This document shows, one piece after another, positions 1-45,946 of a stretch of DNA of 64,000 nt (positions within the stretch are counted from its first letter, which is position 1; every line of letters starts with the position of its first letter). The translations under genes were made by a program, and so were the position numbers. Origin of the DNA: Scyliorhinus canicula (lineage: Eukaryota); the NCBI RefSeq assembly GCF_902713615.1, contig NC_052158.1, positions 53,042,823 to 53,106,822 of the forward strand, written 5' to 3'. A model generated the notes under the pieces. That model saw only the letters and a list, made by a program, of their open reading frames with translations. It ran no database searches and was not told the DNA's origin.

Positions 1-2332
1 GAGCCCCTGTAAATAAACCCCAACACAACACAGAGCCCCTGTAAATAAACCCCAACACAGAGCCCCTGTAAATAAACCCCAACACAACACAGAGCCCCTG
101 TAAATAATCCCCAACACAACACAGAGCCCCTGTAAATAAACCCCGAACACAGAGCCACTGTAAATAATCCCCAACACAACACAGAGCCCCTGTAAATAAA
201 CCCCGAACACAGAGCCACTGTAAATAAACCCCAACACAGCACTGAGCCCCTGTAAATAAACCCCAACACAGAGCCCCTGTAAATAAACCCCAACACAACA
301 CAGAGCCCCTGTAAATAATCCCCAACACAACACAGAGCCCCTGTAAATAAACCCCGAACACAGAGCCACTGTAAATAAACCCCAACACAGAGCCCCTGTA
401 AATAAACCCCAACACAACACAGAGCCCCTGTAAATAAACCCCAACACAACACAGAGCCCCTGTAAATAAACCCCAACACAGAGCCCCTGTAAATAAACCC
501 CAACACAACACAGAGCCCCTGTAAATAAACCCCAACACAACACAGAGCCCCTGTAAATAAACCCCAACACAGCACTGAGCCCCTGTAAATAAACCCCAAC
601 ACAGAGCCCCTGTAAATAAACCCCAACACAACACAGAGCCCCTGTAAATAAACCCCAACACAACACAGAGCCCCTGTAAATAAACCCCAACACAACACAG
701 AGCCCCTGTAAATAAACCTCAACACAGAGCCCCTGTAAATAAACCCCAACACAGAGCCCCTGTAAATAAACCCCGAACACAGAGCCCCTGTAAATAAACC
801 CCAACACAACACAGAGCCCCTGTAAATAAACCCCAACACAGAGCCCCTGTAAATAAACCTCAACACAACACAGAGCCCCTGTAAATAAACCCCAACACAA
901 CACAGAGCCCCTGTAAATAAACCCCAACACAACACAGAGCCCCTGTAAATAAACCCCAACACAACACAGAGCCCCTGTAAATAAACCTCAACACAGAGCC
1001 CCTGTAAATAAACCCCAACACAGAGCCCCTGTAAATAAACCCCGAACACAGAGCCCCTGTAAATAAACCCCAACACAACACAGAGCCCCTGTAAATAAAC
1101 CCCAACACAACACAGAGCCCCTGTAAATAAACCCCAACACAACACAGAGCCCCTGTAAATAAACCCCAACACAACACAGAGCCCCTGTAAATAAACCCCA
1201 ACACAACACAGAGCCCCTGTAAATAAACCCCAACACAACACAGAGCCCCTGTAAATAAACCCCAACACAGAGCTCCTGTAAATAAACCCCAACACAACAC
1301 AGAGCCCCTGTAAATAAACCCCAACACAACACAGAGCTCCTGTAAATAAACCCCAACCCAACACAGAGCCCCTGTAAATAAACCCCAACCCAACACAGAG
1401 CCCCTGTAAATAAACCCCAACACAGAGCCCCTGTAAATAAACCCCAACACAACACAGAGCCCCTGTAAATAAACCTCAACACAACACAGAGCCCCTGTAA
1501 ATAAACCCCAACACAACACAGAGCCCCTGTAAATAAACCCCAACACAACACAGATCCCCTGTAAATAAACCCCAACCCAACACAGAGCCCCTGTAAATAA
1601 ACCCCAACACAACACAGAGCCCCTGTAAATAAACCCCAACACAACACAGAGCCCCTGTAAATAAACCCCGAACACAGAGCCCCTGTAAATAAACCTCAAC
1701 ACAACACAGAGCCCCTGTAAATAAACCCCAACACAACACAGAGCCCCTGTAAATAAACCCCAACACAACACAGAGCCCCTGTAAATAAACCCCAACACAA
1801 CACAGAGCCCCTGTAAATAAACCCCAACACAACACAGAGCCCCTGTAAATAAACCCCAACACAACACAGAGCCCCTGTAAATAAACCCCAACACAACACA
1901 GAGCCCCTGTAAATAAACCCCAACACAACACAGAGCCCCTGTAAATAAACCCCAACACAACACAGAGCCCCTGTAAATAAACCCCAACACAGAGCCCCTG
2001 TAAATAAACCCCAACACAGAGCCCCTGTAAATAAACACCAACAAAACACAGAGCCCCTGTAAATAAACCTCAATACAACACAGAGCCCCTGTAAATAAAC
2101 CTCAATACAACACAGAGCTCCTGTAAATAAACCTCAATACAACACAGAGCTCCTGTAAATAAACCCCAACACAACACAGAGCCCCTGTAAATAAACACCA
2201 ACAAAACACAGAGCCCCTGTAAATAAACCCCGACACAGAGCCCCTGTAAATAAACCCCAACACAGAGCCCCTGTAAATAAACCCCAACCCAACACAGATC
2301 CCCTGTAAATAAACCTCAACACAACACAGAGC
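1..2332. repeat. Minisatellite with 27/32-bp units (GAGCCCCTGTAAATAAACCCCAACACA +/- ACACA), intron 1 of the putative MHC-like gene; runs off the left edge
   Basis: Direct reading: first unit 1-32, second unit 33-59, with interspersed 27- and 32-bp variants. Each unit reads GTTTATTTACAG|G on the minus strand, which is acceptor-like. Confidence 0.97.
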
Positions 2333-3420
2333 GACATCAAGGTGAATGAAAATTTCGAGCGCTATGTCTTCCGACAGCGTTTACAGGGTAAGGATGAACC
2401 TTTCCAGTCCTTTCTCACCCACCTCCACATCCTTGTGCAGTCCTGTAATTACGGGTCCACCTCCGACTCCATGATACGCGACCAGATCGTTTTCGGTGTT
2501 CAGTCGGACCCTCTACGCCAGCAGCTCCTCAAGGTAAAGCAGCTCACCCTAGCGATTACCATCGAGACCTGCGTGCTACATGAACACACCGCTAGTCGGT
2601 ATTCCCACGTCCAAGCGGCTGAAACAGCGCGGCAAGGTCCCCACGAGGCAGAACGGGTCCAAGCAATCAAGCAACTCCAGGGCCTCAGCCTGGATGAGGG
2701 AAGCCATTTCGTGCGCTTTTCACGGATTCCCACGCTTGCGCGGACTGAACGAGGGGATGGTGGTGTCGATGATCGCACTGCGCAGGCGTGCACCACGTAT
2801 GACCGCACCGTACATGAGCAGTGGCGCAGCGAGCGTACTGAAGCTACAACGTGCGGCAACTATGGCTCCGCCCACTTAAAGCGGCAATGTCCTGCCAAAT
2901 CCTGATGCTGCCTACAATGTGGGAAACTTGGCCACTATGCTGCTTTATGCAGGTCTGCTCAGCCTGCCACCTCTTGTCGTTCCAGCCAGCCTCGCAGGGA
3001 TGTCCGCACCATCCAACCCACGGTCACCAAACCCGATTCAGACCTGCTGCCTGATATTGACACTGAGGACCCGAAGGCACCTTTTCGAGTCGGTATCGTT
3101 ACCAAACACAGGGTGCCCCGAAGCAAACAGTCCAGCCTCTACCGGTACACAGCATTGATCCGGACGATGAGTGGTATGCCACCCTTACAGTCAAACTGTC
3201 CCAAAGCCAATTCCGCCTGGACACCGGTGCCTCCACCAATCTCATTGCGCGGTCTGACCTCCAAAGCCTTCGTGTCAAACCAGCCATCCTGCCATCAGCC
3301 TGCCAGCTACTAGATTGTATGGCAATGCCATTGCTGCCAGTGGCTCATGCCAACTTGAAGTGACGCACAGGTAACGCAAAGCCATCCGTCCCTTTGAAAT
3401 CGTGGGATCCTCTAAAGCCT
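2331..3420 (+). mobile_element. Gypsy LTR-retrotransposon internal fragment (gag, zinc knuckle, protease), decayed, no LTRs
   Basis: ORF 2342..2905 (QGKDEPFQSFLTHL..QSCNYG..IRDQIVFG..CGNYGSAHLKRQCPA), plus a degenerate protease motif (ctggacaccggtgcc, LDTGA, near 3217). Same family as the elements at 8545-15970 and 17350-21923. Confidence 0.9.
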
Positions 3421-5466
3421 CCCATTACTCACTGACTGAGGGTTAATACCCCAGTACCCAGACTGAGACCCTCTCTAACCCCATTACTCACTGACTGAGG
3501 GTTAATACCCCAGTACCCAGACACTGAGACCCTCTCTGACCCCATTACTCACTGACTGAGGGTTAATACCCAACTACCCAGACACTGAGACCCTCTCTGA
3601 CCCCATTACTCACTGATTGAGGGTTAATACCCCAGTACCCAGACACTGTGACCCTCTCTGACCCCATAACCCACTGACTGAGGGTTAATACCCTAGTACC
3701 CAGACACTGAGACCCTCTCTGACCCCATTACTCACTGACTGAGGGTTAATACCCCAGTACCCAGACAGTGAGACCCTCCCTGACCCCATTACTCACTGAC
3801 TGAGGGTTAATACACCAGTACCCAGACCAAGATCCTCTCTGACCCCATTACTCACTGACTGAGGGTTAATACCCCAGTACCCAGACACTGTGACCCTCTC
3901 TGACCCCATTACCCACTGACTGAGGGTTAATACCCCAGTACCCAGACACTGAGACCCTCTCTGACCCCATTACTCACTGACTGAGGGTTAATACCCCACT
4001 ACCCAGACACTGAGACCCTCTCTGACCCCATTACTCACTGACAGGGTTAATACACCAGTACCCAGACCAAGACCCTCTCTGACCCCATTACCCACTGACT
4101 GAGGGTTAATACCCCAGTACCCAGACACAGACCCTCTCTGACCCCATTACTCACTGACTGAGGGTTAATAACCCAGTACCCAGACTGAGACCCTCTCTGA
4201 CCCCATTACTCACTGACAGGGTTAATACACCAGTACCCAGACCAAGACCCTCTCTGACCCCATTACCCACTGACTGAGGGTTAATACCCCAGTACCCAGA
4301 CTGAGACCCTCTCTGACCCCATTACCCACTGACTGAGGGTTAATACCCCAGTACCCAGACACTGAGACCCTCTCTGACCCCATTACTCACTGACAGGGTT
4401 AATACACCAGTACCCAGACCAAGACCCTCTCTGACCCCATTAGTCACTGACTGAGGGTTAATACCCCAGTACCCAGACTGAGACCCTCTCTGACCCCATT
4501 ACTCACTGACTGAGGGTTAATAACCCAGTACCCAGACACTGAGAGCTCTGTGACCCCATTACTCACTGACTGAGGGTTAATACCCCAGTACCCAGACACT
4601 GAGACCCTCTCTGACCCCATTACTCACTGACTGAGGGTTAATACACCAGTACCCAGACTGAGACCCTCTCTGACCCCATTACTCACTGACTGAGGGTTAA
4701 TACCCCAGTACCCAGACACTGAGAGCTCTGTGACCCCATTACTCACTGACTGAGGGTTAATACCCCAGTACCCAGACAGTGACCCTCTCTGACCCCATTA
4801 CCCACTGACTGAGGGTTAATACCCCAGTACCCAGACACTGAGACCCTCTCTGACCCCATTACTCACTGACTGAGGGTTAATACCCCAGTACCCAGACACT
4901 GAGACCCTCTCTGACCCCATTACCCACTGACTGAGGGTTAATACCCCAGTACCCAGACACTGAGACCCTCTCTGACCCCATTGCTCACTGACTGAGGGTT
5001 AATACCTCAATACCCAGACACTGAGACCCTCACTGACCCCATTACTCGCTGATTGAGGGTTAATACCCCAGTACCCAGACACAGACCCTCTCTGACCCCA
5101 TTACCCACTGACTGAGGGTTAATACCCCAGTACCCAGACACTGAGACCCTCTCTCACCCCATTACCCACTGAGGGTTAATACTCCAGTACCCAGACACTG
5201 AGACCCTCTCTGACCCCATTACCCACTGACTGAGGGTTAATACCCCAGTACCCAGACACTGAGACCCTCTCTGACCCCATTATCCACTGACTGAGGGTTA
5301 ATACCCCAGTACCCAGACTGAGACCCTCTCTGACGCCATTACCCACTGACTGAGGGTTAATACCCCAGTACCCAGGCTGAGACCATCTCTGACCCCATTA
5401 CTCACTGACTGAGGGTTAATACCCCAGTACCCAGACTCTGAGACCCTCTCTGACCCTATTACTCAC
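3421..5466. repeat. Minisatellite with ~61-bp units (CCCCATTACTCACTGACTGAGGGTTAATACCCCAGTACCCAGACACTGAGACCCTCTCTGA), starting at the intron 1 donor
   Basis: About 34 tandem units with small indels. On the minus strand each unit contains CAGTGAGTAATGGGG (donor-like) and GGGTCTCAG, which matches the end of the adjacent exon. Confidence 0.97.
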
Positions 5467-5512
5467 CTGCTGAGACCCCTCCAGTAATGATCAGTAATAT
5501 TAATCTCAGCAT
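5467..5512 (-). CDS. Signal-peptide (leader) exon, MLRLILLIITGGVSA+G, phase-1 intron; probable exon 1 of an MHC class I-like gene (rest of gene left of the window)
   Basis: Minus strand GCAGCA ATG CTG AGA TTA ATA TTA CTG ATC ATT ACT GGA GGG GTC TCA GCA G|GTGAGT: n-region Arg, hydrophobic core, small residues at -3/-1 (V-S-A), consensus donor, and an upstream X/Y-box promoter. The GGVSA ending matches my recollection of shark class I leaders (not database-checked). Confidence 0.72.
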
Positions 5513-5698
5513 TGCTGCTTCCTCTGTCACACTCTGATGAAGATGGTGTGAGATATCCACTTCCAGCAGACACACTCCCTGTACTCTGACTGCCTCCTGT
5601 CCCTCCAGACTCTTACTCCGTGCAGATTACACAATGCTCATTGTCTTAAACTCAGACACTTCACAATTAACATAAACTTTCCAAATGTTATGAGGTAA

Positions 5699-5761
5699 CC
5701 AATCAGAGGAACACTGTGAACAACATTGTTAGTTGCCAAGGAGAATAATAAGTTAAGGTTT
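5699..5761 (-). promoter_or_regulatory. MHC-type SXY promoter module: Y box CTGATTGG (5706-5699), RFX X1-like CCTTGGCAAC (5741-5732), weak S-like AAACCT (5761-5756)
   Basis: Motifs read directly on the minus strand. GCAAC and CTGATTGG are separated by exactly 25 nt, and the module lies ~190 bp upstream of the leader ATG. Confidence 0.65.
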
Positions 5762-5789
5762 GAGAATTGTGCAAGAACCTGAATGTAAT

Positions 5790-6560
5790 TTGATCCAGAA
5801 CATTATTTTTATTAATTTCCGAGATGTAGGTGTCGCTGGTTGGGACGTGCATTTATTATCCGTTCCTAATTGCCCTTGAGGAGGTGGTGGTGAGCTGCTT
5901 CTTGACCCACTGAAGTCCCTGAAGCGTACGTACATCCACACCGATGTTAGGGAGGAGTTCCAGGATTTTGACTGAGTGGTGGTGAAGGAACATTTAAATG
6001 TTGTGAGCATTTTAGAGGCGATCTTGCAGGTTGTGGGGTCCCCTGGTATCTGCTGCCCTTGTCTTTCTAGATGGTTGTGGTCATGGGTTTAAAAGATGCT
6101 GCCCGCGGAGCCTTGGTGAGTTCCTGCAGTGCATCATGTGGATGGTACACATGACTGTCACTTTTCATTGGGAATGGAGGGATTGCATTTTTTTGTGACT
6201 GACTTGCCAGTCAAGTAGGGTGGTAAACGTGTTAAGTGTTTTTGGAGCTTTACTCTTCTAGGCAAGTCCTGACTTGTGCATTATAGTTGGTGAAAAAGTC
6301 TTTATGGGGTCAGTGGGTGAGTTACTCGCCGCAGGATTCCTAACCTCTGACCTGCTCTTGTAGCCACAGTATTCATATTGCTACTCCAGTTCAGTTTCTG
6401 GTCAATGGTAACTCCCAGGATGTTGATAGTGAGGGCTTCAGTGATGGTAATGCCATTGAATGTCAAGGGGAGATGGTTACATTCTCTCATTGGTGATGGT
6501 CATTGCGACATGAATGTTATTTGTTACTTGTCAGCCTAAACCTGGATACTGGCCAGGTAT
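5790..6560 (-). mobile_element. L2/CR1-group LINE 3' fragment (RT C-terminus and 3' UTR)
   Basis: ORF 6302..6490 ILGVTIDQKLNWSSNMNTVATRAGQRLGILRR is a typical RT thumb/C-terminal segment. Confidence 0.75.
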
Positions 6561-10128: not shown

Positions 10129-10134
10129 TACTCT

Positions 10135-12912
10135 TTGGGAGGGTTTAAACTAATTTGGCAGGGGAATGGGAACCGGATTTGTAGTCCAGCAACTAAGGAA
10201 GCCGATATTCAGGACGCCAAAGCACGTAGTGATGCAGTGGGGAAGGTAACACTGACAAAGGAGAGTACTTGCAGGCAGGGAGATGGGTTGAAGTGTGTAT
10301 ACTTCAACGCAAGAACCATCAGGAATAAGGTGGGTGAACTTAAGGCATGGATCGGTACTTGGGACTACGATGTGGTGGCCATTACGGAAACTTGGATAGA
10401 AGAGGGGCAGAAATGGTTGTTGGATGTCCCTGGTTATAGATGTTTCAACAAGATTAGGGAGGGTGGTAAAAGAGGTGGGGGGGGGGGGGTGGCATTGTTA
10501 ATTAGAGATAGTATAACAGCTGCAGAAAGGCAGTTCGAGGACGATCTGCCTACTGAGGTAATATGGGTTGAAGTCAGAAATAGGAAAGGAGCAGTCACCT
10601 TGTTGGGAGTTTTCTATAGCCCCCCCCCCCCCCCCCCCCCTCCCCGCAATAGCAGCAGAGATGTGGAGGAACAGATTGGGAAACAGATTTTGGAAAGGTG
10701 CAGAAGTCACAGGGTAGTAGTCATGGGTGACGTCAACTTCCCAAACGTTAAGTGGAAACTCTTTAGATCAAATAGTTTGGATGGGGTGGTGTTTGCGCAG
10801 TGTGTCCAGGAAGCTTTTCTAACACAGTATGTAGATTGTCCGACCAGAGGGGAGGCCATATTGAATTTGGTACTTGGTAACGAACCAGGGCAGGTGATAG
10901 ATTTGTTAGTGGGGGAGCATTTTGGAGATAGTGACCACCATTTTGTGACTTCTCACTTTAGTAATGGAGAGGGATAGGTGCGTGCAACAGGGCAAGGTTT
11001 ACAATTGGGGGAAGGGTAAATACAATGCTGTCAGTCAAGAACTGAAGTGCATAAGTTGGGAACATAGGCTGTCAGGGAAGGACACAAGTGAAATGTGGAA
11101 CTTGTTCAAGGAACAGGTAATGTGTGTCTTTGACATGTATATCCCTGTCAGGCAGGGAAGAGATGGTCGAGTGAGGGAACCATGGTTGACAAGAGAGGTT
11201 GAATGTCTTGTTAAGAGGAAGAAGGAGACTTATGTAAGGCTGAGGAAACAAGGTTCAGACAGGGCGCTGGAGGGATACAAGATAGCCAGGAGGGTACTGA
11301 AGAAAGGGATTAGGAGAGCTAAGCGAGGGCATGAAAAATCTTTGGCGGGTAGGATCAAGGAAAACCCCAAGGCCTTTTACACATATGTGAGAAATATGAG
11401 AATGACTAGAGTGAGGGTAGGTCTGATCAAGGACAGTAGCGGGAGATTGTGTATTGAGTCTGAAGAGATAGGAGAGGTCTTGAACAAGTACTTTTCTTCA
11501 GTATTTACAAACGAGAGGGGCCATATTGTTGGAGAGGACAGTGTGAAACAGACTGGTAAGCTCGAGGAGATACTTGTTAGGAAGGAAGATGTGTTGGGCG
11601 TTTTGAAAAACTTGAGGACAGACCAGTCCCCTGGGCCTGACGGGATATATCCAAGGATTCTATGGGAAGCAAGAAATGAAATTGCAGAGCCGTTGGCAAT
11701 GATCTTTTCATCCTCGCTGTCAACAGGGGTGGTACCAGGGGATTGGAGAGTGGCGAATGTCGTGCCCCTGTTCAAAAAAGGGAATAGGGATAACCCTAGG
11801 AATTACAGGCCAGTTAGTCTTACTTCTGTGGTACGCAAAGTAATGGAAAGGGTACTGAGGGATAGGATTTCTGAGCATCTGGAAAGACACTGCTTGATTA
11901 GGGATAGTCAGCACGGATTTGTGAGGGGTAGGTCTTGCCTCACAAGTCTTTTTGACTTCTTTGAGGAGGTGACTAAGCATGTGGATGAAGGTAAAGCAGT
12001 GGATGTAGTGTACATGGATTTTAGTAAGGCATTTTGATAAGGTTCCCTATGGTAGGCTTATGCAGAAAGTAAGGAGGCATGGGATAGTGGGAAATTTGGC
12101 CAGTTGGATAACGAACTGGCTAACCAATAGAAGTCAGAGAGTGGTGGTGGATGGCAAATATTCAGCCTGGAGCCCAGTTCCCAGTGGCGTACCGCAGGGA
12201 TCAGTTCTGGGTACTCTGCTGTTTGTGATTTTCATTAATGACTTGGATGAGGGAGTTGAAGGGTGGGTCAGTAAAGTTGCAGACAATACGAAGATTGGCG
12301 GAGTTGTGGATAGTGAGGAGGGCTGTTGTCGGCTGCAAAGAGACATAGATAGGATGCAGAGCTGGGCTGAGAAGTGGCAGATGGAGTTTAACCCGACAAG
12401 TGTGAGGTTGTCCATTTTGGAAGGACAAATATGAATGCGGAATACAGGGTTAATGGTAGGGTTCTTGGCAATGTAGAGGAGCAGAGAGATCTTGGGGTCT
12501 GTGTTCATAGATCTTTGAAAGTTGCCACTCAAGTGGATAGAGCCGTGAAGAAGGCCTATGGTGTGCTAGCATTCATTAGCAGAGGGATTGAATTTAAGGT
12601 GAGGTGATGATGGAACTGTACAAAACCTTGGTCAGGCCACATTTGGAGTACTGTGTGCAGTTCTGGTCACCTCATTTTAGGAAGGATGTGGAAGCTTTGG
12701 AAAAGGTGCAAAGGAGATTTAGCAGGATGTTGCCTGGGATGGAGAGTAGGTCTTACGAGGAGAGGTTGAGGGTGCTAGGCCTTTTCTCATTAGAACGAAG
12801 AAGGATGAGGAGCGACTTGATAGAGGTTTATAAGATGATCAGGGGAATAGATAGAGTAGACAGTCAGAGACTTTTTCCCCGGGTGGAACAAGGGGACATA
12901 AATTTAAGGTAA
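10135..12912 (+). pseudogene. CR1 ORF2 (AP endonuclease and reverse transcriptase), broken into 4 ORFs
   Basis: VYFNARTI, VAITETW, MGDVN, SDH; [43 protein letters not shown] (degenerate FADD). Confidence 0.93.
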
Positions 12913-13308: not shown

Positions 13309-15074
13309 ACCTAAGACAAAAGTTAGGACAAAAGTTTGGCACAACATCGTGGGCTGAAGGGCCTGTTCTGTGCTGTATCTCTCTTAAAAAAAAAGCCAGA
13401 GGGCACTAGTTTTCCTGCTCGCTTGGGATCCAGCCCCTGGGACAGTCAGAGCTTGTGAGCAGCGACTAGAACATACACCATGTGGTAGTAAGATAGTCTG
13501 GTCAGGTTAGCCTCAGGTCTCCAGTCAAGTCAGCATAGTGTCGACCCACAGTTATAGCATGTATTACAGCTAAGTGTTCAATAAAATCGAGTTGCATTTC
13601 TTCAAGTGTTGGAAGCCTGTCTCCCTCACTGCTGCAGTAAACGCAGCCCTCGTAGACCCAGCTTACCCAACACATCATGGTACCAGTGAGTTATGCTTGA
13701 GTTTGACAGACCTACTGTGAGATAATCTGCCTTCGACCAGCGATCAGCCATCCGGTAACATGGACAGCGTCCGCCCTCCCCCGCCGCTCCGCATCGCCGG
13801 CAACCTCGGTGCAAACTGGAAGATTTTCAAGCAGAAGTTCCAGCTCTATCTTGAAGGAACTGACCTTGAGGCCGCATCGGATGCCAGTAAGCTCGCTCTC
13901 TTCCTTTCAACTGCCGGGACCTTTGCTGAAGGCGAAGACAAGACGAACTTTAAAACAGTCCTGCTGAAGTTTGACAGCCACTGTGACATTGAGGTGAATG
14001 AGAGCTTTGAACGGTAGGTTTTTCAGCAGAGGCCTCAGGGTAAGGATGAACCTTTTCAGTCTTTTTTAACCCATCTCCGTATCCTCGCGCAGTCCTGCAA
14101 CTATGGCTCCACTTCCGATTCCATGATCCGGAATCAGATTGTTTGCGGGGTCCACTCTGATCCCCTTCACCAGCAGCTCCAAAAGGTTAAGCAGCTCACC
14201 CTCACCATCGCGACCTGTGTCCTCCATGAGCGCGCTAACAACCGGTACTCCCATATCAAAGCGACAGAAATGGCACAGCAAGGCCCCCACGATGCAGAAC
14301 GGGTGCAGGCCATCAAACAAATGCAGGGCCTGAGCCTGGATGAGGGCAGCCATTTCGCATGCTTTTCCCGGACTCCAGCGCATGCGCGCCACGACCGAGG
14401 AGACGGCGAGACTGACGACCAAACCGTGCAAGTGCGCACGTTATCCGACCACACTGCGAATGCGCGGTGGTGCACGGAACGTCTGGACGGCGGCGCCATG
14501 ACGTGTTCCAACTGTGGCTCCGCCCATTTAAAGCGAAAATGTCCCACAGAATCTCGACGCTGTCTCCAGTATGGCAAGCTCAGCTACTACGCAGCCCTTT
14601 GCAGATCTGCTCCACTGCCCGGCATTCGGCGATCACAGCCACAGCGCAGGAGCGTCCGGTCTGTACAGCGACACATCGCAGACTCCGACCCCGACAGTCT
14701 ACCAGATCCCGACACTGAGGGCCTCACATCCCCATTCCGGGTGGGCATCGTCACCAAGCATACACTGCCTTTATCAACGATGGTGAAACAACTCCCAATT
14801 CTGAGCATTGATCCGGACGACGAGTGGTGTACCATCCTCACAGTCAACAAGGCTTGCATACGCTTTCGGCTGGACACCGGAGCTTCGGCAAACCGCTTTT
14901 CAAAGTCTGACCTCGACACCATCCATGTCAAGCCAAGCATTGATCCACCGGCCTGCCAGCTCCTCGACTACAATGGCAATGCCATTGCTGCCAGTGGCTC
15001 ATGCCAACTTGCGGTGTCCAATAGATCATTAAAAGCAACGCTGCGATTTGAAATCGTAGGAACCGCACGGTTCA

Positions 15075-15411
15075 GGGCAGCACGGTAGCATGGTGGTTAG
15101 CATAAATGCTTCACAGCTCCAGGGTCCCAGGTTCGATTCCCGGCTTGGGTCACTGTCTGTGCGGAGTCTGCACGTCCTCCCCGTGTGTGCGGGGTTTCCT
15201 CCGGGTGCTCCGGTTTCCTCCCACAGTCCAAAGATGTGCGGGTTAGGTGGATTGGCCATGCTAAATTGCCCGTAGTGTCCTAAAAAGTAAGGTTGGGGGG
15301 GGAGGTTGTTGGGTTACGGGTATAGGATGGATACATGGGTTTGAGTAGGGTGATCATTGCTTGGCACAACATTGAGGGCCGAAGGGCCTGTTCTGTGCTG
15401 TACTGTTCTAT
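15075..15411 (+). mobile_element. V-SINE (HE1-like) inserted in Gypsy A protease region
   Basis: GGGCAGCACGGTAGCATGGTGG head, B box GGTTCGATTCC, V-domain, CR1-type tail GGGCCGAAGGGCCTGTTCTGTGCTGTACTGTTCTAT. Confidence 0.95.
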
Positions 15412-15971: not shown

Positions 15972-17290
15972 CAAGTCGTGGTCCACATAGGTACCAACGA
16001 CATAGGTAGGAAGAGAGATGGGGATTTGAGACAGAAATTCAGGGAGCTAGGGTGGAAGCTGAGAGCTAGAACAAACAGAGTTGTTATCTCTGCCACGTGC
16101 CACGTGCTAGCGAAGTGAGAAATAAGGAGAGAGAGGAGTTGAACACGTGGCTACAGGGATGGTGCAGGAGGGAGGGTTTTGGTTTCCTGGATAATTGGGG
16201 CTCATTCTGGGGTTGGTGGGACCTCTACAAACAGGATGGTCTTCACCTGAACCAGAGGGGTACCAATATCCTGGGGGAGAGATTTGCTAGTGCTCTTCGG
16301 GGGGGTTGAAACTAATTCAGCAGGGGGATGGGAACCTAAATTGTAGTCCCAGTGTACAGGATGTTGAGAGTAGTGAGGTCAGGGATAGGGTTAAAAGTTC
16401 GAAAGAGGGCACTGGCAAGCAAGACGCTGGTTTGAAGTGTGTCTACTTCAACGCCAGGAGCATCCGGAATAAGGTGGGTGAGCTTGTAGCATGGGTTGGT
16501 ACCTGGGATCTCAATGTTGTGGCGATTTCGGAGACATGGGTAGAGCAGGGACCGGAATGGTTGTTGCAGGTTCCAGGATTTAGATGTTTCTGTAAGACCA
16601 GAGAAGATGGTAAAAGAGGGGGGGGGGGTGTGGCATTGTTAATCAAGGAAAGTATTACGGCGGTAGAAAGGACGTTTGAGGACTCGTCTACTGAGGTAGT
16701 ATGGGCCGAGGTTAGGAACAGGAGAGGAGAGGTCACCCTGTTGGGAGTTGTCTATAGACCTCCGAATAGTTCCAGAGATGTAGAGGAAAGGATTGCAAAG
16801 ATGATTCTCGACAGGAGCGAGAGTAACAGGGTAGTTGTTATGGGGGACTTTAACTTTCCAAATATTGACTGGAAATACTATAGTTCGAGTACTATAGATG
16901 GGTCAGTTTTTGTGCAGTGTGTGCAGGAGGGTTTTCTGACACAGTATGTAGACAGGCCAACAAGGGGCGAGGCCACATTGGATTTGGTACTGGGTAATGA
17001 ACCCGGCCAGGTGTTAGATTTAGATGTAGGTGAGCACTTTGGTGATAGTGATCACAATTCGGTTATGTTTACTTTAGCAATGGGCAGGGATAGGTATATA
17101 CTGCAAGGCAAGAATTATAGCTGGGGGAAAGGCAATTATGATGCTATTCGGCAAGATTTAGGATGTATAGGATGGGAAAGGAAACTGCAGGGGATGGGTA
17201 CAATCGAAATGTGGAGCTTTTTCAAGGAACAGCTACTGCGTGTCCTTGATAAGTATGTACCTGTCAGGCAGGGAGGAAGTTGTCGAGTAA
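15972..17290 (+). mobile_element. CR1 internal fragment (ORF1 esterase end, ORF2 APE), truncated at both ends
   Basis: VVVHIGTND; ORF 16306..17313 APE motifs; ends abruptly at GTCGAGTAA with no 3' tail. Confidence 0.92.
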
Positions 17291-17349
17291 TAGTTCAATG
17301 CTGTGTGCCCTAGCAAACACCTCCCAACTCAGAAATTAAAAGAGAAATT

Positions 17350-20300
17350 TGAAATGTTGGCTAGTGTAGACTTGAGAGATCAACAGACATTACCAACACT
17401 GAGGAAGGTTCAACTCAATTTTATTAACTAACTTCTAACTAACTAACACACGATGGCTCTGGGTCTAAATGATGCTAACTTAAACTAGAGACCTAAGCCT
17501 TGTCCAAACCAGTTGATTCTCTCAGCACGTGGTGTGAGTCCGTGCTGGGCTGGATGAGTTCTTGTTCCACTGAGAGGCAGCACCCAGAATGAGCGGGAAC
17601 CGTGGTGCCCTCTGCCTTTATAGTGTGTGTATTCTAACTGGTTATTGGCTGTGGTGTTTGTACATGTTGATTGGTCCCTGTGTGTGTCCATCAGTGTGTG
17701 TCTGCACCATCATATATTGGTATATATTATGACATCTCCCCTTCTATAAAAAAATGTTGATGTAGGCATGTGCTAATAAATAGTGTGGGTGTGTGAAGAA
17801 TGTACCTAACCATGTGTGAGGTGCAAAGACATTTACAAAGTTATATACAGGAAACAAGACTATGTACAAAGGAAGGTGCCTGGTGCAGATATTTAACATG
17901 AACTGGAACAACCAACAAAGCTATTTACAAATCACTGGAGAACGAATTCAACAAGGAATGAAAAAAAAACATCTCAGAAAGTTCATAAGTTCAGTCTCTG
18001 AGGTGGACGATGAAGTCTGGTTGACTGCCTCAAGTGTGGGGCAATAGCTGACGCATCAGGAGCCAGGAGGGCTGCAGCATAGTCAGGGGCGGGCAGAGTG
18101 ACCAAAAACTCTGCACAGTCCACGGCGGGATCATTAGCAAAGCTGGTCAGCAGGCTCCAAGGTCCACAGCTTCACAGCTCCAAGGTCCCAGGTTCGATTC
18201 CCGGCTGGGTCACTGTCTGTGTGGAGTCTGCACGTCCTCCCCGTGTGTGCGTGGGTTTCCTCCGGGTGCTCCGGTTTCCTCCCACAGTCCAAAGATGTGC
18301 GGGTTAGGTGGATTGGCCATGCTAAATTGCCCGTAGTGTCCTAATAAAAGTAAGGTTAAGGGGGATGTTGTTGGGTTACGGGTATAGGGTGGATACGTGG
18401 GTTTGAGTAGGGTGATCATGAATCGGCACAACATTGAGGGCCGAAGGGCCTGTTCTGTGCTGTACTGTTCTATGTTCTATGTTCTATGGTCGGAGGATCC
18501 CATGACAACTCTGGAACAAGGCGAAGGGCACGCCAATTGCGGCGCCGAATGGATCCATCCGGTAAGCGGACCAGGAATGAGCAGGGGGCCACCTGCCTTA
18601 GAACGACAGCAGGCGCAGACCAGCCACCATCCGGGAGGTGGATGCAAACCGTGTCGTGTGGATGGCTGTCGGGAAGGTCAGCAGCCCGTGAGTCGTAGGA
18701 AGTTTTCTGCTGCAGTTGAGACATGTGCATGCGGTGGAGCACGGGGACATAATCAAGGTTGTGGGTGAGAATTGATGGCACCGTCGTTCTGAGGGTGCGG
18801 TTGATTAGTAGCTGAGCAGGCGATAGGCCGGTGGAGAGCGGGGCGGAGAGATAGGCTAACAGAGCAATCTGAGCCGGCGTCGGCGGCTTTGCTGAGGAGC
18901 CGCTTGACGATGTGGACCCCCTTTTCCGCCTTCCCATTGGATTGGGGGTACAGGGGACTAGACGTGATGTGCGCGAAGCTGTAGTGTCGGGTGAAGCCGG
19001 CCCATTCCTGCCTCACGAAACAGGGGCCATTGTCTGACATGACTGTCAACGGAATGCCATGGCGGGCAAACGTCTCCTTACACGACCTGGTCACAGCCGA
19101 GGATGTGAGATCATGCAGCCTGATGACCTCCGGGTAACTGGAGAAGTAGTCGATGATGATGATGACGTAGTCCCTGCCCAATGTGTGGAACAGGTCAATG
19201 CCCACTTTGGTCCAAGGCGATGTGACGAGCTCATGGGGCATCAGTGTCTCCTGTGATTGGGCGGGCTGAAAACGCTGGCAAGTAGAGCAGTTGAGTACCG
19301 CATTGGCGATGTCATTGTTAATGCCCAGCCAGTAGACAGCTTCTCTGGCCCTGCAGCGACATTTCTCGATTCCTAAATGGCCTTCATGGAGTTGCTCCAA
19401 CAGTAGCTGGCGCATGCTTTGTGGAATGACGATGCGATCCAATTTCAGGAGCACCCCGTCGACAACTGCCAGGTCATCACGGGCATTGTAAAATTGTGGG
19501 CATTGGCCCTTGAGCCACCCGTCTGACATTAAACGCATCACACACTGCAGAAGTGGGTCAGCCGCTGTCTTGCGGCGAATTTGCATCAGTCACGCATCCA
19601 AAGCTGGCAAATGGGAGGCTGCAAGCTGAACTTGAGCATCTATTTGGCAGACAAAGCCTTCGTGATCACACGGAGTTGTGATCGACCTTGAGAGGGCATC
19701 GGTAACGGCAAGGTCCTTGCCAGGGGTATAGATCAGTTGAAAGTCATACCTGCGCAGCTTGAATAGGATACGCTGGAAGGGAGGCGTCATGTCATTCAAG
19801 TCCTTTTTGATAATATTTACAAGCGGGTGGCGGTCGGTTTCAACCGTGAACTGTGGAAGTCCATAGACGTTGTCATGGAACTTCATGACTCCAGTGAGAA
19901 GGCCGAGACACTCTTTTTCAATTTGCACATAGCGCTGCTCTGTGGGGGTCATCGCCCGTGATGCATACGCAATGGGGGCCCATGACGAGGCCTCGTCTCG
20001 TTGCACAGCTCCAATCCCCAACTGACTGGCATCAGTAAAGATTTTGGTCTCATTGGTCGGGTCGAAAAAGGCCAACACTAGGGCCGTAGAAAGCTTGGCC
20101 TTCAGCTCCCGCCATTCAAGCTCGTGAGCAGGGAGCCATCGGAAATCTGTGGTTTTGCGAATCAGGTCTCTGAGGGCTGTGGTGTGTGAGGCGAGATTCG
20201 GGATGAACTTCCCGAGGAAATTCACCATGCCCAGGAACCGGAGGACCACTTTCTTGTCCTCGGGCATCTTCATGGACGTGATTGATGCAACCTTGTCCTC

Positions 20301-21923
20301 GTCCGGACGCACACCCTGGTGGGAGTTGTGATCCCCCAGAAACTTAATGTTCGACTGGTGAAGGAGAATTTGGCCCTATTGAGGCGGAGGCCGTGTTCAT
20401 GAATGCGCCTGAAAACACGCTTCAGGCGGGCAATGTGTTCCTGCTGGTTGACCAGATAATAATGTCGTCGACATGTACCCGGATGCCGTCGATTCCCTCC
20501 ATTATCTGCTCCATTATTCGATGGAAAACGTCGGACGCAGAAATGATGCCGAATGGCATCCGGTTGTAGCAGAACCTGCCAAAGGGTGCGTTGAACGTAC
20601 ACAGCTTCCTGCTTGACTCATCTAGTTGGATCTGCCAGAAACCCTTCGAGGCATCCAGTTTTGAGAAGAGTTTGGCGTGGGCCATCTCAGACGTGAGCTC
20701 CTCACGTTTTGGAATCGGATAGTGCTCCCGCATGATATTCTGATTCAGATCTTTAGGATCTATACAGATCCGCAGCTCGCCGGACGGTTTCTTAACGCAG
20801 ACCATGGAGCTTACCCAGTCTGTGGGTTCCGTGACCCTAGAAATAACTCCTTGGTCCTGGAGGTCCTGGAGCTTTTGCTTGAGGCCATCCTTAAGGGGCG
20901 CTGGGACTCTGCGAGGTGCATGAACGACAGGCATGGCGTTGGGCTTGAGTAAGATTTTATATGTTTACAGGAGTGTGCCCATGCCCTTGAAGACATCATG
21001 GTGTTGCTGGATGATGGAGTCGAGTTGCGCCCTGAAGTCTGTGTCAGAGGATGCAGACACATCGCTTGGAGAGAGAGTGTGACCCGTAGTTGCAGGACTG
21101 CGCAAGGACACGGAGGTGGGTGATAAAGGACTGGAAAGGCTCGTCCTTACCCTGAATTCGCTGCTGGAACATGTGTCTCTCGAAGCTCTCTTTAACATCG
21201 ACCTCGCAGTGGCTGTCGAACTTTAGAGTGACGGTCTTGAACTTCGATTTGTCCTCCCCCTCAGCGAAGCTGAGCGAGTTGAAGATGTGTAGAGCATGGT
21301 CCCCGGTTGTGGAGAGGAAGAGAGCAATCTTCCGTGCGTCCGAGGCAGCTTCCAGGTCCATGGCCTCGAGGTACAGCTGGAAGCGCTATTTAAAAAGCTT
21401 CCAGTTAGCGTCCAGATTCCCGGCAATGCGGAGGCGAGCGAACGGAGTCCATTCTGTAGGATGGCACGAGACTGGTGGAAGGCAGATCACTGAAAGGTAG
21501 GTCTCGGAAGTGCGAGCATCCCTCAACTTCTGGTACCATGAAGTGTTGGCTAGTGTAGACTTGAGAGATGAACAGACACTACCAACACTGAGGAAGGTTC
21601 AACTCAATTTTATTAACTAACTTCTAACTAACTAACACACGATGGCTCTGGGTCTAAATGATGCTAACTTAAACTAGAGACCTAAGCCTTGTCCGAACCA
21701 GTTGATTCTCTCAGCACGTGGTGTGAGTCTGTGCTGGGCTGGATGAGTTCCTGTTACACTGAGAGGCAGCACCCAGAATGAGCGGGAACCGTGGTGCCCT
21801 CTGCCTTTATAGTGCATGTGTTCTAACTAGTGATGGGCTGCGGTGTTTGTACATGTTGATTGGTCCCTGTGTGTGTCCATCACTGTGTGTCTGCACCATG
21901 ATATACTGGTGTATATTATGACA
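17350..21923 (-). mobile_element. Gypsy element B, both 385-bp LTRs (17350-17734, 21539-21923), 5-bp TSD AAATT, PBS, PPT; internal gag-protease deletion
   Basis: TG..CA LTRs; AAATT at 17345-17349 and 21924-21928; PBS TGGTACCAGAAG (21538-21527); PPT AGAAGGGGAGA (17745-17735); RT (20422..20934), RNase H (19590..20312), integrase H-H-C-C and DDE (18753..19586). Confidence 0.96.
18168..18487 (+). mobile_element. V-SINE (HE1-like), head slightly truncated, inserted after the Gypsy B integrase
   Basis: B box, V-domain, tail ending (TGTTCTA)n. Confidence 0.93.
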
Positions 21924-44953: not shown

Positions 44954-45579
44954 ACCCATCAAGATGCTCGGTCAGCAGGATTCTTTGCTGTCGCCGGGAT
45001 GCCCCAGGTCCAGGGGCATGCATGTTGCCTTGCGCTCACCGGACTGACCATGACATCAATAGGAAGAGGCTCCAGTCCCTGTATGTCATGCACATGACAC
45101 CCGCGCTGTCATTGAGCAATGCATCGGATTGCTCAAAATTCAGTTTTGATGCCACGACCGCTCTGGTGGTGCACTGCAGTACATCCAGAGGGTCACCTGC
45201 TGTGCCCTCCAAAACCTGGCATAGTAGCGGGGCAACATGCTGAAGGGGGAGGGGGAGGAACATGTGACAACGATGAGGAGGCACCGGACCAAGAGGGGCT
45301 GGAGGACGAGCTCTAGGAAGATCTACAGGACTAACTGGAGGACGGGCGGCAGCAGCGATGGTCCATCAAACTCGGAGGGCTAGGAACCTCACCCGCTTCA
45401 CCTACGTGGCCTCGTCCATCATCGCACCCCATTCCCTCTCTCTCCCCCCCACCCATTCCTCCTCCCATTCCTCCCAATCCCCCTTCCCCTATCGCTCCTT
45501 CCCCTACCCATTTCTCTCCCCCCCACCCAGAGCCCTGTTCCACCCTCCCAGGGTCTGTTATTCTGGAGTGTCCCAGCAA

Positions 45580-45895
45580 TGCCCACCTGTGACTGGGACA
45601 TGTTCTGGCGTGCCGTGGCAATGCCCACCTTCGACTGGGACATGTTCTGGAGTGCCGTGGCAATGCCCACCTGTGACTGGGCCATGTTCTGGAGTGCCAT
45701 GGCAATGCCCACCTTCGACTGGGACATGTTCTGGAGTGCCATGGCAATGTCCAACTGTGACTGGGCCATGTTCTGGAGTGCCATGGCAATGTCCAACTGT
45801 GACTGGGACATGTTCTGGAGTGCCATGGCAATGCCCAACTGTGACTGGGCCATGTTCTGGAGTGCCATGGCAATGCCCAACTGTGACTGGGACAT
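45580..45895 (-). repeat. 42-bp coding tandem repeat (MSQSQLGIAMALQN)n in the Harbinger Myb/SANT C-terminus
   Basis: ORF 45419..45895 shows ~7-8 in-frame 14-aa units. Confidence 0.85.
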
Positions 45896-45946
45896 GCTCT
45901 ACAATGTCTCATACAAGCCCAACTTGGGGCTGGGACATGTCCCCCG

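What the first reader, a model, noticed from the sequence alone, without database searches (positions are those of the whole stretch)
5467..5512. Hidden leader exon of a probable MHC class I-like gene, absent from the ORF track
Seen: minus-strand ATG..GCA G|GTGAGT encodes a 15-aa signal peptide (MLRLILLIITGGVSA) ending in a phase-1 intron, within ~300 bp of unique sequence between a minisatellite and a LINE. Known: MHC class I and many IgSF genes have a leader-only first exon with a phase-1 intron. Recalled, not checked: shark class I leaders end in GGVSA. Inference: the alpha1-alpha3 exons lie left of position 1. Shark class I lineages are diverse and incompletely catalogued, so this could be an unannotated or non-classical paralog.
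Basis: partly seen in the sequence, partly recalled or inferred. Interest (0 to 1): 0.85.

Follow-up and report, generated by a model that had tools for sequence, protein, structure and literature searches.

The report
Real leader exon, catshark class I-like gene
The short minus-strand exon is real, transcribed and spliced as predicted, and it starts an MHC class I-like gene next to the catshark's antigen-processing genes that is very probably already annotated and published as "MHC-Ia like".

Summary
On the minus strand, ATG at 5512 opens a 15-codon signal peptide (MLRLILLIITGGVSA). It ends at 5467 in CAG|GTGAGT, phase 1.

Assembled RNA contigs from three runs cover 5467 to about 5621 without a mismatch. 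All stop fitting exactly at 5467. All continue with the same 30 letters, which are absent from the window and read on in frame as V-PHSWLVMYT. That resembles the start of a class I alpha1 domain (mouse H-2Kb: GPHSLRYFVT).

Exon 1 is therefore about 5621-5467, with a 109-nt 5'UTR and no upstream ATG. A TATA-like box lies at about -29 and an X1/Y (SXY-like) module at about -80 to -120.

Distances to other notes of this scan, compared with the published catshark chromosome 13 gene table, put the window at about 53.04 Mb. That is the 5' end of LOC119976123 (minus strand, 69 kb), labelled "MHC-Ia like" by Verissimo et al. 2023. This scan had already noted the gene's alpha2 exon junction about 20 kb downstream.

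So the MHC call holds. "Unannotated" very probably does not. I could not retrieve the alpha1-alpha3 exons or the protein.

Side observation: intron 1 opens with 34 copies of a 61-bp unit seeded at the exon/intron junction, each copy keeping a donor-like GTGAGT or GTGGGT.

The parts
5467..5621 (-). Exon 1 of the class I-like gene: about 109 nt of 5'UTR (5621-5513) plus the leader coding part. The 5' end is taken from RNA contig ends at 5621, 5618 and 5603.
   Evidence: minus-strand contigs in X1 (727 nt, depth 48), X2 (192 nt, depth 21) and X3 (723 nt, depth 60) fit 5467-5621/5618/5603 with 0 other letters. Depth is 0 in these runs over the unique flank 5627-5856.
5467..5512 (-). Leader coding sequence: ATG plus 14 codons plus the first base of the split codon (MLRLILLIITGGVSA, then G|TT = Val after splicing).
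   Evidence: translation; the only such signal-peptide-like phase-1 exon in the window, with 0 in shuffles. It is the first ATG of the transcript (read).
5461..5466 (-). The 5' splice site GTGAGT that is used, preceded by CAG.
   Evidence: contigs of all four runs stop fitting at 5467 and carry the same loose end (plus strand CAGTGTACATGACAAGCCAAGAGTGAGGAA), which is not in the window.
3421..5474 (-). 61-bp minisatellite of about 34 copies at the start of intron 1. Its first unit is the real exon/intron junction. Later units keep TCA|GTGAGTAAT or TCA|GTGGGTAAT.
   Evidence: TRF: period 61, 34.3 copies, 91% matches. (units listed in register with the donor).
5644..5650 (-). TATA-like TTTAAGA, about 23-29 nt upstream of the contig 5' end (inference from position only).
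   Evidence: Sequence read; 5' end.
5697..5741 (-). X1-like box (CCTTGGCAACTAAC, 5741-5728) and Y box/CCAAT (CTGATTGGTT, 5706-5697). This is an SXY-like module about 80-120 nt upstream of the transcript start.
   Evidence: TTGGCAAC-N(18-28)-CTGATTGG occurs once in the window and 0 times in 100 shuffles. That the motifs resemble the MHC SXY module rests on my own knowledge. Binding was not tested.
1..2332 (.). 32-bp satellite of about 76 copies, further inside intron 1.
   Evidence: strong GC and AT skew.
2309..2902 (+). Open frame between the two satellites that resembles the open frame at 14018-15085. It is probably a retroelement fragment inside intron 1, not an exon of this gene.
   Evidence: shared motif QGKDEPFQSFLTHL.IL.QSCNYGSTSDSMIR.QI; no Pfam hit.

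Best explanation
Positions 5621-5467 (minus strand) are the first exon of an expressed MHC class I-like heavy-chain gene of the small-spotted catshark. Transcription starts near 5621, downstream of an X1/Y (SXY-like) promoter module and a TATA-like box. The first ATG (5512) opens a 15-residue signal peptide with a VSA cleavage motif. The exon ends in phase 1 at CAG|GTGAGT and is spliced, across an intron longer than 5.4 kb that begins with two satellites, to an exon outside the window. That exon starts (V)PHSWLVMYT, the position and motif of a class I alpha1 domain start. By position the gene is LOC119976123 on chromosome 13 (52,979,427-53,048,437, minus), the 'MHC-Ia like' gene next to TAP2 and the partial MHC-Ia models. 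Shown here: the exon, its transcription, the use and phase of the donor, and the first ten residues of exon 2. Inferred: the class I identity of the remaining exons, the identity with LOC119976123, promoter function, and signal-peptide cleavage after Ala15.
For: Exon and donor as described; unique and not expected by chance. RNA contigs of three runs cover exactly the exon with no mismatch, while the unique upstream flank has zero depth. All break at 5467 with one shared continuation, which is absent from the window and reads in frame as V-P-H-S-W-L-V-M-Y-T. Mouse H-2Kb mature heavy chain starts GPHSLRYFVT (printed in PMC12811252), so P2, H3, S4 and T10 are shared directly after the signal peptide. 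The X1-like plus Y-box pattern is unique in the window. An earlier scan note places tandem copies of an alpha2 exon end and its donor 19,951 nt before the window start, which is downstream on the minus strand. With the window start at about 53,042,817, scan notes on class I and class II features fall inside genes labelled MHC-Ib or MHC-IIA in the published table: LOC119976116, LOC119975565, LOC119975562, LOC119976356 and LOC119975904. The next best anchor fails. The table has no other gene in 53.05-53.20 Mb, and the rest of the window holds only retroelement frames and no tRNA.
Against: Only 30 nt (10 codons) of the next exon could be read. No alpha1, alpha2 or alpha3 exon or protein was retrieved. 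Four of ten residues is a weak match on its own, and Tyr7 of classical molecules is Val here. The run kinds are guessed ('RNA?'), and contigs carry no strand. The identity with LOC119976123 rests on distances between unchecked AI notes and on setting the transcript start equal to the annotated gene end. One note (an alpha2 exon predicted at 39,538,518) falls about 0-270 nt outside its presumed gene, so the anchor may be off by a few hundred bases. In four 2026 raw-read RNA runs the exon is almost silent (1 read). In run X7 the junction contig covers only about 5467-5511, which I cannot explain.
Confidence: 0.85

Rival explanations
1. The exon is real but leads a non-MHC secreted or membrane gene (for example another IgSF gene). 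The PHS...YT start of exon 2 would then be a coincidence.
For: Only ten residues of exon 2 are known. Leader-only exons with phase-1 introns are common in IgSF genes (general knowledge). No protein or domain hit could be obtained.
Against: The xPHS motif directly after the signal peptide, plus T10, matches a class I alpha1 start. There is an SXY-like promoter, an alpha2-junction note 20 kb downstream, and mapping to a gene labelled 'MHC-Ia like'.
Confidence: 0.06
2. The exon belongs to a class I-like gene that is transcribed but decaying. It would be an expressed pseudogene or a truncated paralogue in the class Ia region, not a working antigen-presenting molecule.
For: Two neighbouring models are listed as 'MHC-Ia (partial)'. 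The gene spans 69 kb with satellite-filled introns. Expression is near zero in four of the runs examined. Residue 7 is not Tyr.
Against: Contigs of 723-727 nt continue 569-586 nt past the junction at depth 48-60, as expected for a stable spliced mRNA. The leader, start context and donor are intact. The authors labelled the gene 'like', not 'partial'.
Confidence: 0.15
3. The RNA contigs come from an identical or near-identical duplicate of exon 1 elsewhere in the genome, and the copy in this window is silent.
For: Class I genes are multicopy on this chromosome, and another scan note describes a duplicated class I promoter and leader elsewhere. Contigs cannot tell identical copies apart.
Against: There is no mismatch over 137-155 nt in three runs from three studies, including 109 nt of 5'UTR. 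The break lies exactly at this copy's consensus donor. A promoter module sits in the right place.
Confidence: 0.05
4. The ORF is a chance product of the minisatellite edge and not an exon.
For: The last 8 nt of the exon and the donor belong to the first unit of the 61-bp array.
Against: There are spliced RNA contigs in four runs. No comparable site appears in shuffles.
Confidence: 0.01

Closest known systems
LOC119976123 of Scyliorhinus canicula (sScyCan1.1, NC_052158.1:52,979,427-53,048,437, minus), labelled 'MHC-Ia like' in Supplemental File 2 of Verissimo et al. 2023 (PMC10751288)
   Same: It has the same strand, and its 5' end coincides with the transcript start if the window begins near 53,042,817. 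It has very long introns. It neighbours TAP2 and partial MHC-Ia models. No other gene is annotated in the span the window would cover.
   Different: Identity is inferred from distances, not from sequence. I could read neither the RefSeq model nor its protein, so I cannot say that its first exon is exactly 5621-5467.
Leader exon of classical MHC class I heavy-chain genes (HLA-A/B/C, H-2K/D; shark UAA)
   Same: It is a leader-only first exon and a phase-1 intron, and the next exon starts with xPHS...T (H-2Kb GPHSLRYFVT). An SXY-type promoter module lies upstream (motif level).
   Different: Intron 1 is longer than 5.4 kb and filled with satellites. In mammals it is about 130 bp (my own knowledge). 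The residues at alpha1 positions 5-9 (W L V M Y) differ from L R Y F Y/V, including Tyr7.
Elasmobranch non-classical class I lineages UBA, UDA, UEA, UFA (Almeida et al. 2020, 2021; Verissimo et al. 2023)
   Same: They are class I-type genes on the same chromosome. Several were noted in this scan to carry minisatellites seeded at exon/intron junctions.
   Different: Those clusters lie at about 32 Mb (UBA) and 38-41 Mb (UDA/UEA/UFA). This gene sits at about 53 Mb in the class Ia region. Lineage assignment needs the alpha1-alpha3 sequence.

Membership tests
MHC class I heavy-chain gene | The first exon encodes only the 5'UTR and signal peptide, and ends in a phase-1 intron | tested here: met
   the exon ends after the first base of a codon, and the donor is used in RNA contigs.
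MHC class I heavy-chain gene | Exon 2 opens the alpha1 domain with the xxHSxxYxxT-type N-terminus | tested here: inconclusive
   One search gives V-PHSWLVMYT. Compared with H-2Kb GPHSLRYFVT, it shares P2, H3, S4 and T10. Only 10 residues are readable.
MHC class I heavy-chain gene | Alpha1 and alpha2 domains of the MHC_I fold (Pfam PF00129), with the alpha2 disulfide | not testable with these tools
   These exons lie outside the window. Protein searches seeded with the leader found nothing. Only an unchecked scan note mentions an alpha2 exon end 20 kb downstream.
MHC class I heavy-chain gene | Alpha3 C1-set Ig domain, transmembrane and cytoplasmic exons | not testable with these tools
   They lie outside the window. 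No C1-set-like or alpha-domain-like frame was found in the window by motif scan.
MHC class I heavy-chain gene | Location in the elasmobranch MHC, where all class I genes are reported to map | tested here: met
   The test is indirect. Distances to scan notes fit the published chr13 table with the window at about 53.04 Mb, beside TAP2 and the MHC-Ia models.
MHC class I heavy-chain gene | SXY-type promoter module (X1/RFX site and Y/CCAAT box at fixed spacing) | tested here: inconclusive
   The X1-like and Y motifs are present, unique in the window and about 80-120 nt upstream of the transcript start. S and X2 were not assessed, and binding was not tested.
Classical (class Ia, peptide-presenting) class I | Conserved peptide-terminus-binding residues (Tyr7, Tyr59, Tyr84, Thr143, Lys146, Trp147, Tyr159, Tyr171) | tested here: not met
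   Only position 7 can be read. It is Val in an ungapped alignment with H-2Kb. The other seven are outside the window. This is one residue from a ten-residue alignment and is weak.

The most novel reading that the evidence does not exclude
Catshark class I genes repeatedly carry minisatellites seeded at an exon/intron junction. Here 34 copies follow the leader donor. By scan notes, about 27 copies follow the alpha2 donor of the same gene, and similar arrays occur in other class I genes. These arrays of donor-like GTGAGT sites may not be neutral slippage products. They could act as clustered U1 snRNP binding sites that protect the very long introns from premature cleavage and polyadenylation, or that tune splicing. 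Separately, this 'MHC-Ia-like' gene beside TAP2 may be a distinct, still undescribed class I lineage with an altered pocket A (Val at position 7).
Probability: 0.12. Interest if true: 0.55.

Novelty: already known. Interest (0 to 1): 0.25.

Why it matters
The result shows that a reader working from raw sequence alone can locate a 46-nt coding exon that no ORF finder lists, and that public RNA data confirm its donor to the base. Biologically it adds little. The gene is very probably LOC119976123, already annotated and mapped as 'MHC-Ia like' beside TAP2 in the catshark class Ia region. Three things may be worth keeping. First, the anatomy of its 5' end: transcript start, first ATG, and an SXY-like module at mammalian-like distance. 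Second, the hint that its alpha1 lacks Tyr7. Third, the observation that intron 1 begins with a donor-seeded minisatellite, a pattern this scan has now noted at several class I exon junctions in this genome.

Tried and rejected

(2) The same tool with the 52-residue open frame of 5'UTR plus leader found no candidate sharing three words. Its length window of 29-91 aa excludes full-length proteins.

(3) The search of protein representatives with the 53-residue frame returned one hit, P0001. This is a translated tandem repeat that matches only the UTR part, so it is a chance match.

(4) phmmer of the 25-mer against PDB gave no hit.

(5) I considered padding the query to full length by aligning it with an unrelated 356-aa protein (A1). 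I simulated this locally: a perfect target scores only about 10 bits and fails HMMER's filters. I ran no further search on it.

(6) Exact and fuzzy search for the 30-nt exon-2 start in the window found nothing, and motif scans of all six frames found no alpha1, alpha2 or C1-set-like frame.

(7) A full-text search for 'GGVSA' gave no relevant paper.

(8) The search of earlier findings by sequence with the 30-mer came back blank.

(9) Raw-read runs X12-X15 gave no junction reads.

(10) I tested LOC119975604 as an alternative anchor for the window. It misplaces the class II and class Ib notes, so I rejected it.

Full report
**Observation.** On the minus strand the window reads ATG CTG AGA TTA ATA TTA CTG ATC ATT ACT GGA GGG GTC TCA GCA G|GTGAGT. 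The ATG is at 5512, the last exon base at 5467 and the donor GT at 5466-5465. The peptide is MLRLILLIITGGVSA:
- a basic residue near the N-terminus;
- a hydrophobic core, LILLII;
- small residues at -3 and -1 (V-S-A).

The exon ends after the first base of a codon, so the intron is phase 1. If unspliced, the frame stops at once (GGT GAG TAA).

The string is unique in the window. A script looked on both strands for ATG, 12-30 open codons, a hydrophobic core, small -1/-3 residues, no acidic residue and G|GTRAGT. It found this site only. It found none in 30 shuffles and none in the reversed sequence.

The exon's last 8 nt and its donor lie inside the first unit of a 61-bp minisatellite that TRF places at 3421-5474.

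**Transcription and splicing.** The look-up of sequencing runs listed runs of one organism that hold about a fifth to a third of the sampled words of 5476-5860. I laid Logan contigs of X1, X2, X3 (kind guessed as RNA) and X7 (kind unknown) on 5420-6100.

| Run | Contig length | Window span | Depth | Other letters |
|---|---|---|---|---|
| X1 | 727 nt | 5467-5621 | 48 | 0 |
| X2 | 192 nt | 5467-5618 | 21 | 0 |
| X3 | 723 nt | 5467-5603 | 60 | 0 |

- In X1, X2 and X3 the unique flank 5627-5856 has zero depth. That serves as the silent-stretch control and argues against DNA contamination.
- In all four runs the fit stops exactly at 5467.
- On the plus strand those letters are CAGTGTACATGACAAGCCAAGAGTGAGGAA.
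- Reverse-complemented and joined to the exon, the mRNA reads ...GTC TCA GCA G|TT CCT CAC TCT TGG CTT GTC ATG TAC ACT G. That is A-V-P-H-S-W-L-V-M-Y-T in the leader's frame.
- These 30 letters are not in the window, even with six errors allowed.

In four 2026 raw-read RNA runs (three oligo-dT bulk, one single-cell) the exon is almost silent. There is one read in X14 and no junction read, with about 1-34% of each run read. Expression therefore depends on the sample.

**Anatomy of the 5' end.**
- The contig ends put the transcript start near 5621, which gives a 109-nt 5'UTR.
- The UTR holds no ATG, so 5512 is the first start codon. It has a purine at -3 (read).
- The UTR is open in the leader's frame back to a TAA at 5629-5627. 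I used that only to build search queries.
- TTTAAGA lies at 5650-5644, about 23-29 nt upstream of the start.
- CTGATTGGTT, a Y/CCAAT box, lies at 5706-5697.
- CCTTGGCAACTAAC, an RFX/X1-like site, lies at 5741-5728.
- The combined pattern TTGGCAAC-N(18-28)-CTGATTGG occurs once in the window and in none of 100 shuffles.

No binding was tested. Upstream of about 5800 a retroelement tail begins.

**Is exon 2 a class I alpha1 exon?** Only ten residues are known. The mature mouse H-2Kb heavy chain, printed in PMC12811252, starts GPHSLRYFVT. The catshark sequence is VPHSWLVMYT. Pro2, His3, Ser4 and Thr10 are shared, directly after a signal peptide and across a phase-1 intron. That is the class I arrangement. 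By rough background frequencies, my own arithmetic and post hoc, four such matches at fixed positions have a chance of about 1 in 100,000. Positions 5-9 differ, and Tyr7 of classical molecules is Val. Taken alone this is suggestive. The context makes it strong.

**Context.**
- A follow-up note of this scan names the genome as the small-spotted catshark.
- Another note (s1-253662) reports about 27 tandem copies of 'the alpha2 exon end and its 5' splice site' 19,951 nt before the window start. That is downstream of the leader on the minus strand. I could not read that DNA.
- Verissimo et al. 2023 (PMC10751288) list the genes of catshark chromosome 13 (NC_052158.1, NCBI annotation release 100).

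Their class Ia region:

| Gene or label | Position (strand) |
|---|---|
| tap1 | 51.63 Mb |
| psmb9a | 51.74 Mb |
| 'MHC-Ia (partial)' | 51.95 Mb |
| TAP2 | 52.44-52.56 Mb |
| 'MHC-Ia (partial)' LOC119975604 | 52,909,688-52,921,675 (minus) |
| 'MHC-Ia like' LOC119976123 | 52,979,427-53,048,437 (minus) |

If the transcript start (window 5621) is the 5' end of LOC119976123, the window begins at 53,042,817. With that anchor the scan's other notes fall where the table has matching genes:

| Offset from window start | Predicted position | Gene in the table |
|---|---|---|
| -10,320,252 | 42.72 Mb | MHC-IIA LOC119975904 |
| -13,310,228 | 39.73 Mb | MHC-Ib LOC119976116 |
| -13,668,625 | 39.37 Mb | MHC-Ib LOC119976112/LOC119976115 |
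| -13,862,712 | 39.18 Mb | MHC-Ib LOC119975565 |
| -14,501,108 | 38.54 Mb | MHC-Ib LOC119975562 |
| -20,888,282 | 32.15 Mb | MHC-Ib LOC119976356 |

- Anchoring on LOC119975604 instead shifts everything by 127 kb into gene-free or unlabelled stretches.
- One note (-13,504,299) lands 0-270 nt beyond the end of LOC119976118. The anchor may therefore be off by a few hundred bases.
- The table shows no other gene between 53.05 and 53.20 Mb. In agreement, the rest of the window holds only retroelement frames and no tRNA: LINE endonuclease and reverse transcriptase at 10129-12034 and 16291-17310, and integrases at 18756-19589 and 52341-53141.

**What the exon does.** It supplies the promoter-proximal 5'UTR, the start codon and the ER signal peptide of the class I-like heavy chain. 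Splicing at 5467 joins it in phase 1 to the alpha1 exon. Cleavage after Ala15 would leave a mature N-terminus VPHSW. Cleavage is inferred from the -3/-1 rule and was not predicted with a dedicated tool.

**The junction minisatellite.** Listed in register, the first unit is the real junction...ctcagcag|GTGAGTAATAGGGTCAGAGAGGGTCTCAG. It is followed by copies of ...ccctcagtca|GTGAGTAATGGGGTCAGAGAGGGTCTCAG. About two thirds of the copies have GTGAGT and one third GTGGGT. Upstream of the donor the unit still resembles the exon end (TACTGG...GGT...CTCAG). The array was therefore most likely seeded by duplication of the exon 1/intron 1 junction.

The RNA contigs examined show use of only the first donor, CAG|GT. 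The copies have A at -1. Scan notes describe similar arrays at alpha2 junctions of this and other class I genes. Whether this reflects local instability or has a role in handling very long introns is open. I give it as the novel case at low probability.

**What I could not do.** I could not obtain the rest of the transcript or the protein. The leader is too short for the word-indexed search. The 52-53-residue UTR-plus-leader frame found nothing relevant. PDB gave nothing. A padding trick was simulated locally and dropped. In X7 the junction contig covers only about 5467-5511. This could be an allelic break in the assembly graph or an alternative 5' end. It remains unexplained.

**Verdict.**
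- The MHC class I-like reading is supported by splicing, by the exon-2 start, by the promoter motifs and by position.
- The 'unannotated paralogue' reading is very probably wrong. The gene is in RefSeq annotation and in a 2023 supplement as 'MHC-Ia like'.
- Novelty: already known. Interest: low to moderate.

Noticed in passing
window 3421-5474: 61-bp minisatellite (about 34 copies) whose first unit is the real exon 1/intron 1 junction. Every later unit keeps a donor-like TCA|GTGAGTAAT or TCA|GTGGGTAAT. Scan notes report similar junction-seeded arrays at alpha2 exons of class I genes in this genome.
   Followed up: partly
window 1-2332: 32-bp satellite (about 76 copies, 90% matches) with extreme strand asymmetry (GC skew about -0.55, AT skew about +0.6). 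It runs off the left end of the window, inside intron 1.
   Followed up: no
window 5697-5741: X1-like (CCTTGGCAACTAAC) and Y-box (CTGATTGGTT) motifs 35 nt apart (start to start), about 80-120 nt upstream of the RNA contig 5' end. The pattern is unique in the window. It is the subject of a separate first-reader note (s1-268261).
   Followed up: partly
window 5467-5511 in run X7: In X7 the contig that carries the splice junction covers only the coding part of exon 1. Depth drops to 0 upstream of about 5512, whereas X1-X3 cover the whole 5'UTR. Possible causes are an allelic break, an alternative 5' exon or a paralogue.
   Followed up: no
window 2309-2902 and 14018-15085: Two plus-strand open frames share a long motif (QGKDEPFQSFLTHL.IL.QSCNYGSTSDSMIR.QI) and have no Pfam hit. 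They are probably gag-like parts of one retroelement family, one copy lying inside intron 1.
   Followed up: no
window 10129-12034, 16291-17310, 18756-20375, 51560-53141: Retroelement frames: LINE endonuclease (Exo_endo_phos) and reverse transcriptase, plus LTR-type integrases (rve, Integrase_H2C2). No cellular gene other than the leader exon was found in the window.
   Followed up: partly
window 45561-45900: 42-bp tandem repeat (8 copies, 91% matches) with open frames on both strands. Not examined.
   Followed up: no
window 5865-5898 and 6046-6087: Very high contig depth (hundreds to thousands) in all runs over short pieces of the retroelement tail upstream of the promoter, with many different loose ends. 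This is a highly repeated, transcribed element family and is unrelated to the gene.
   Followed up: no
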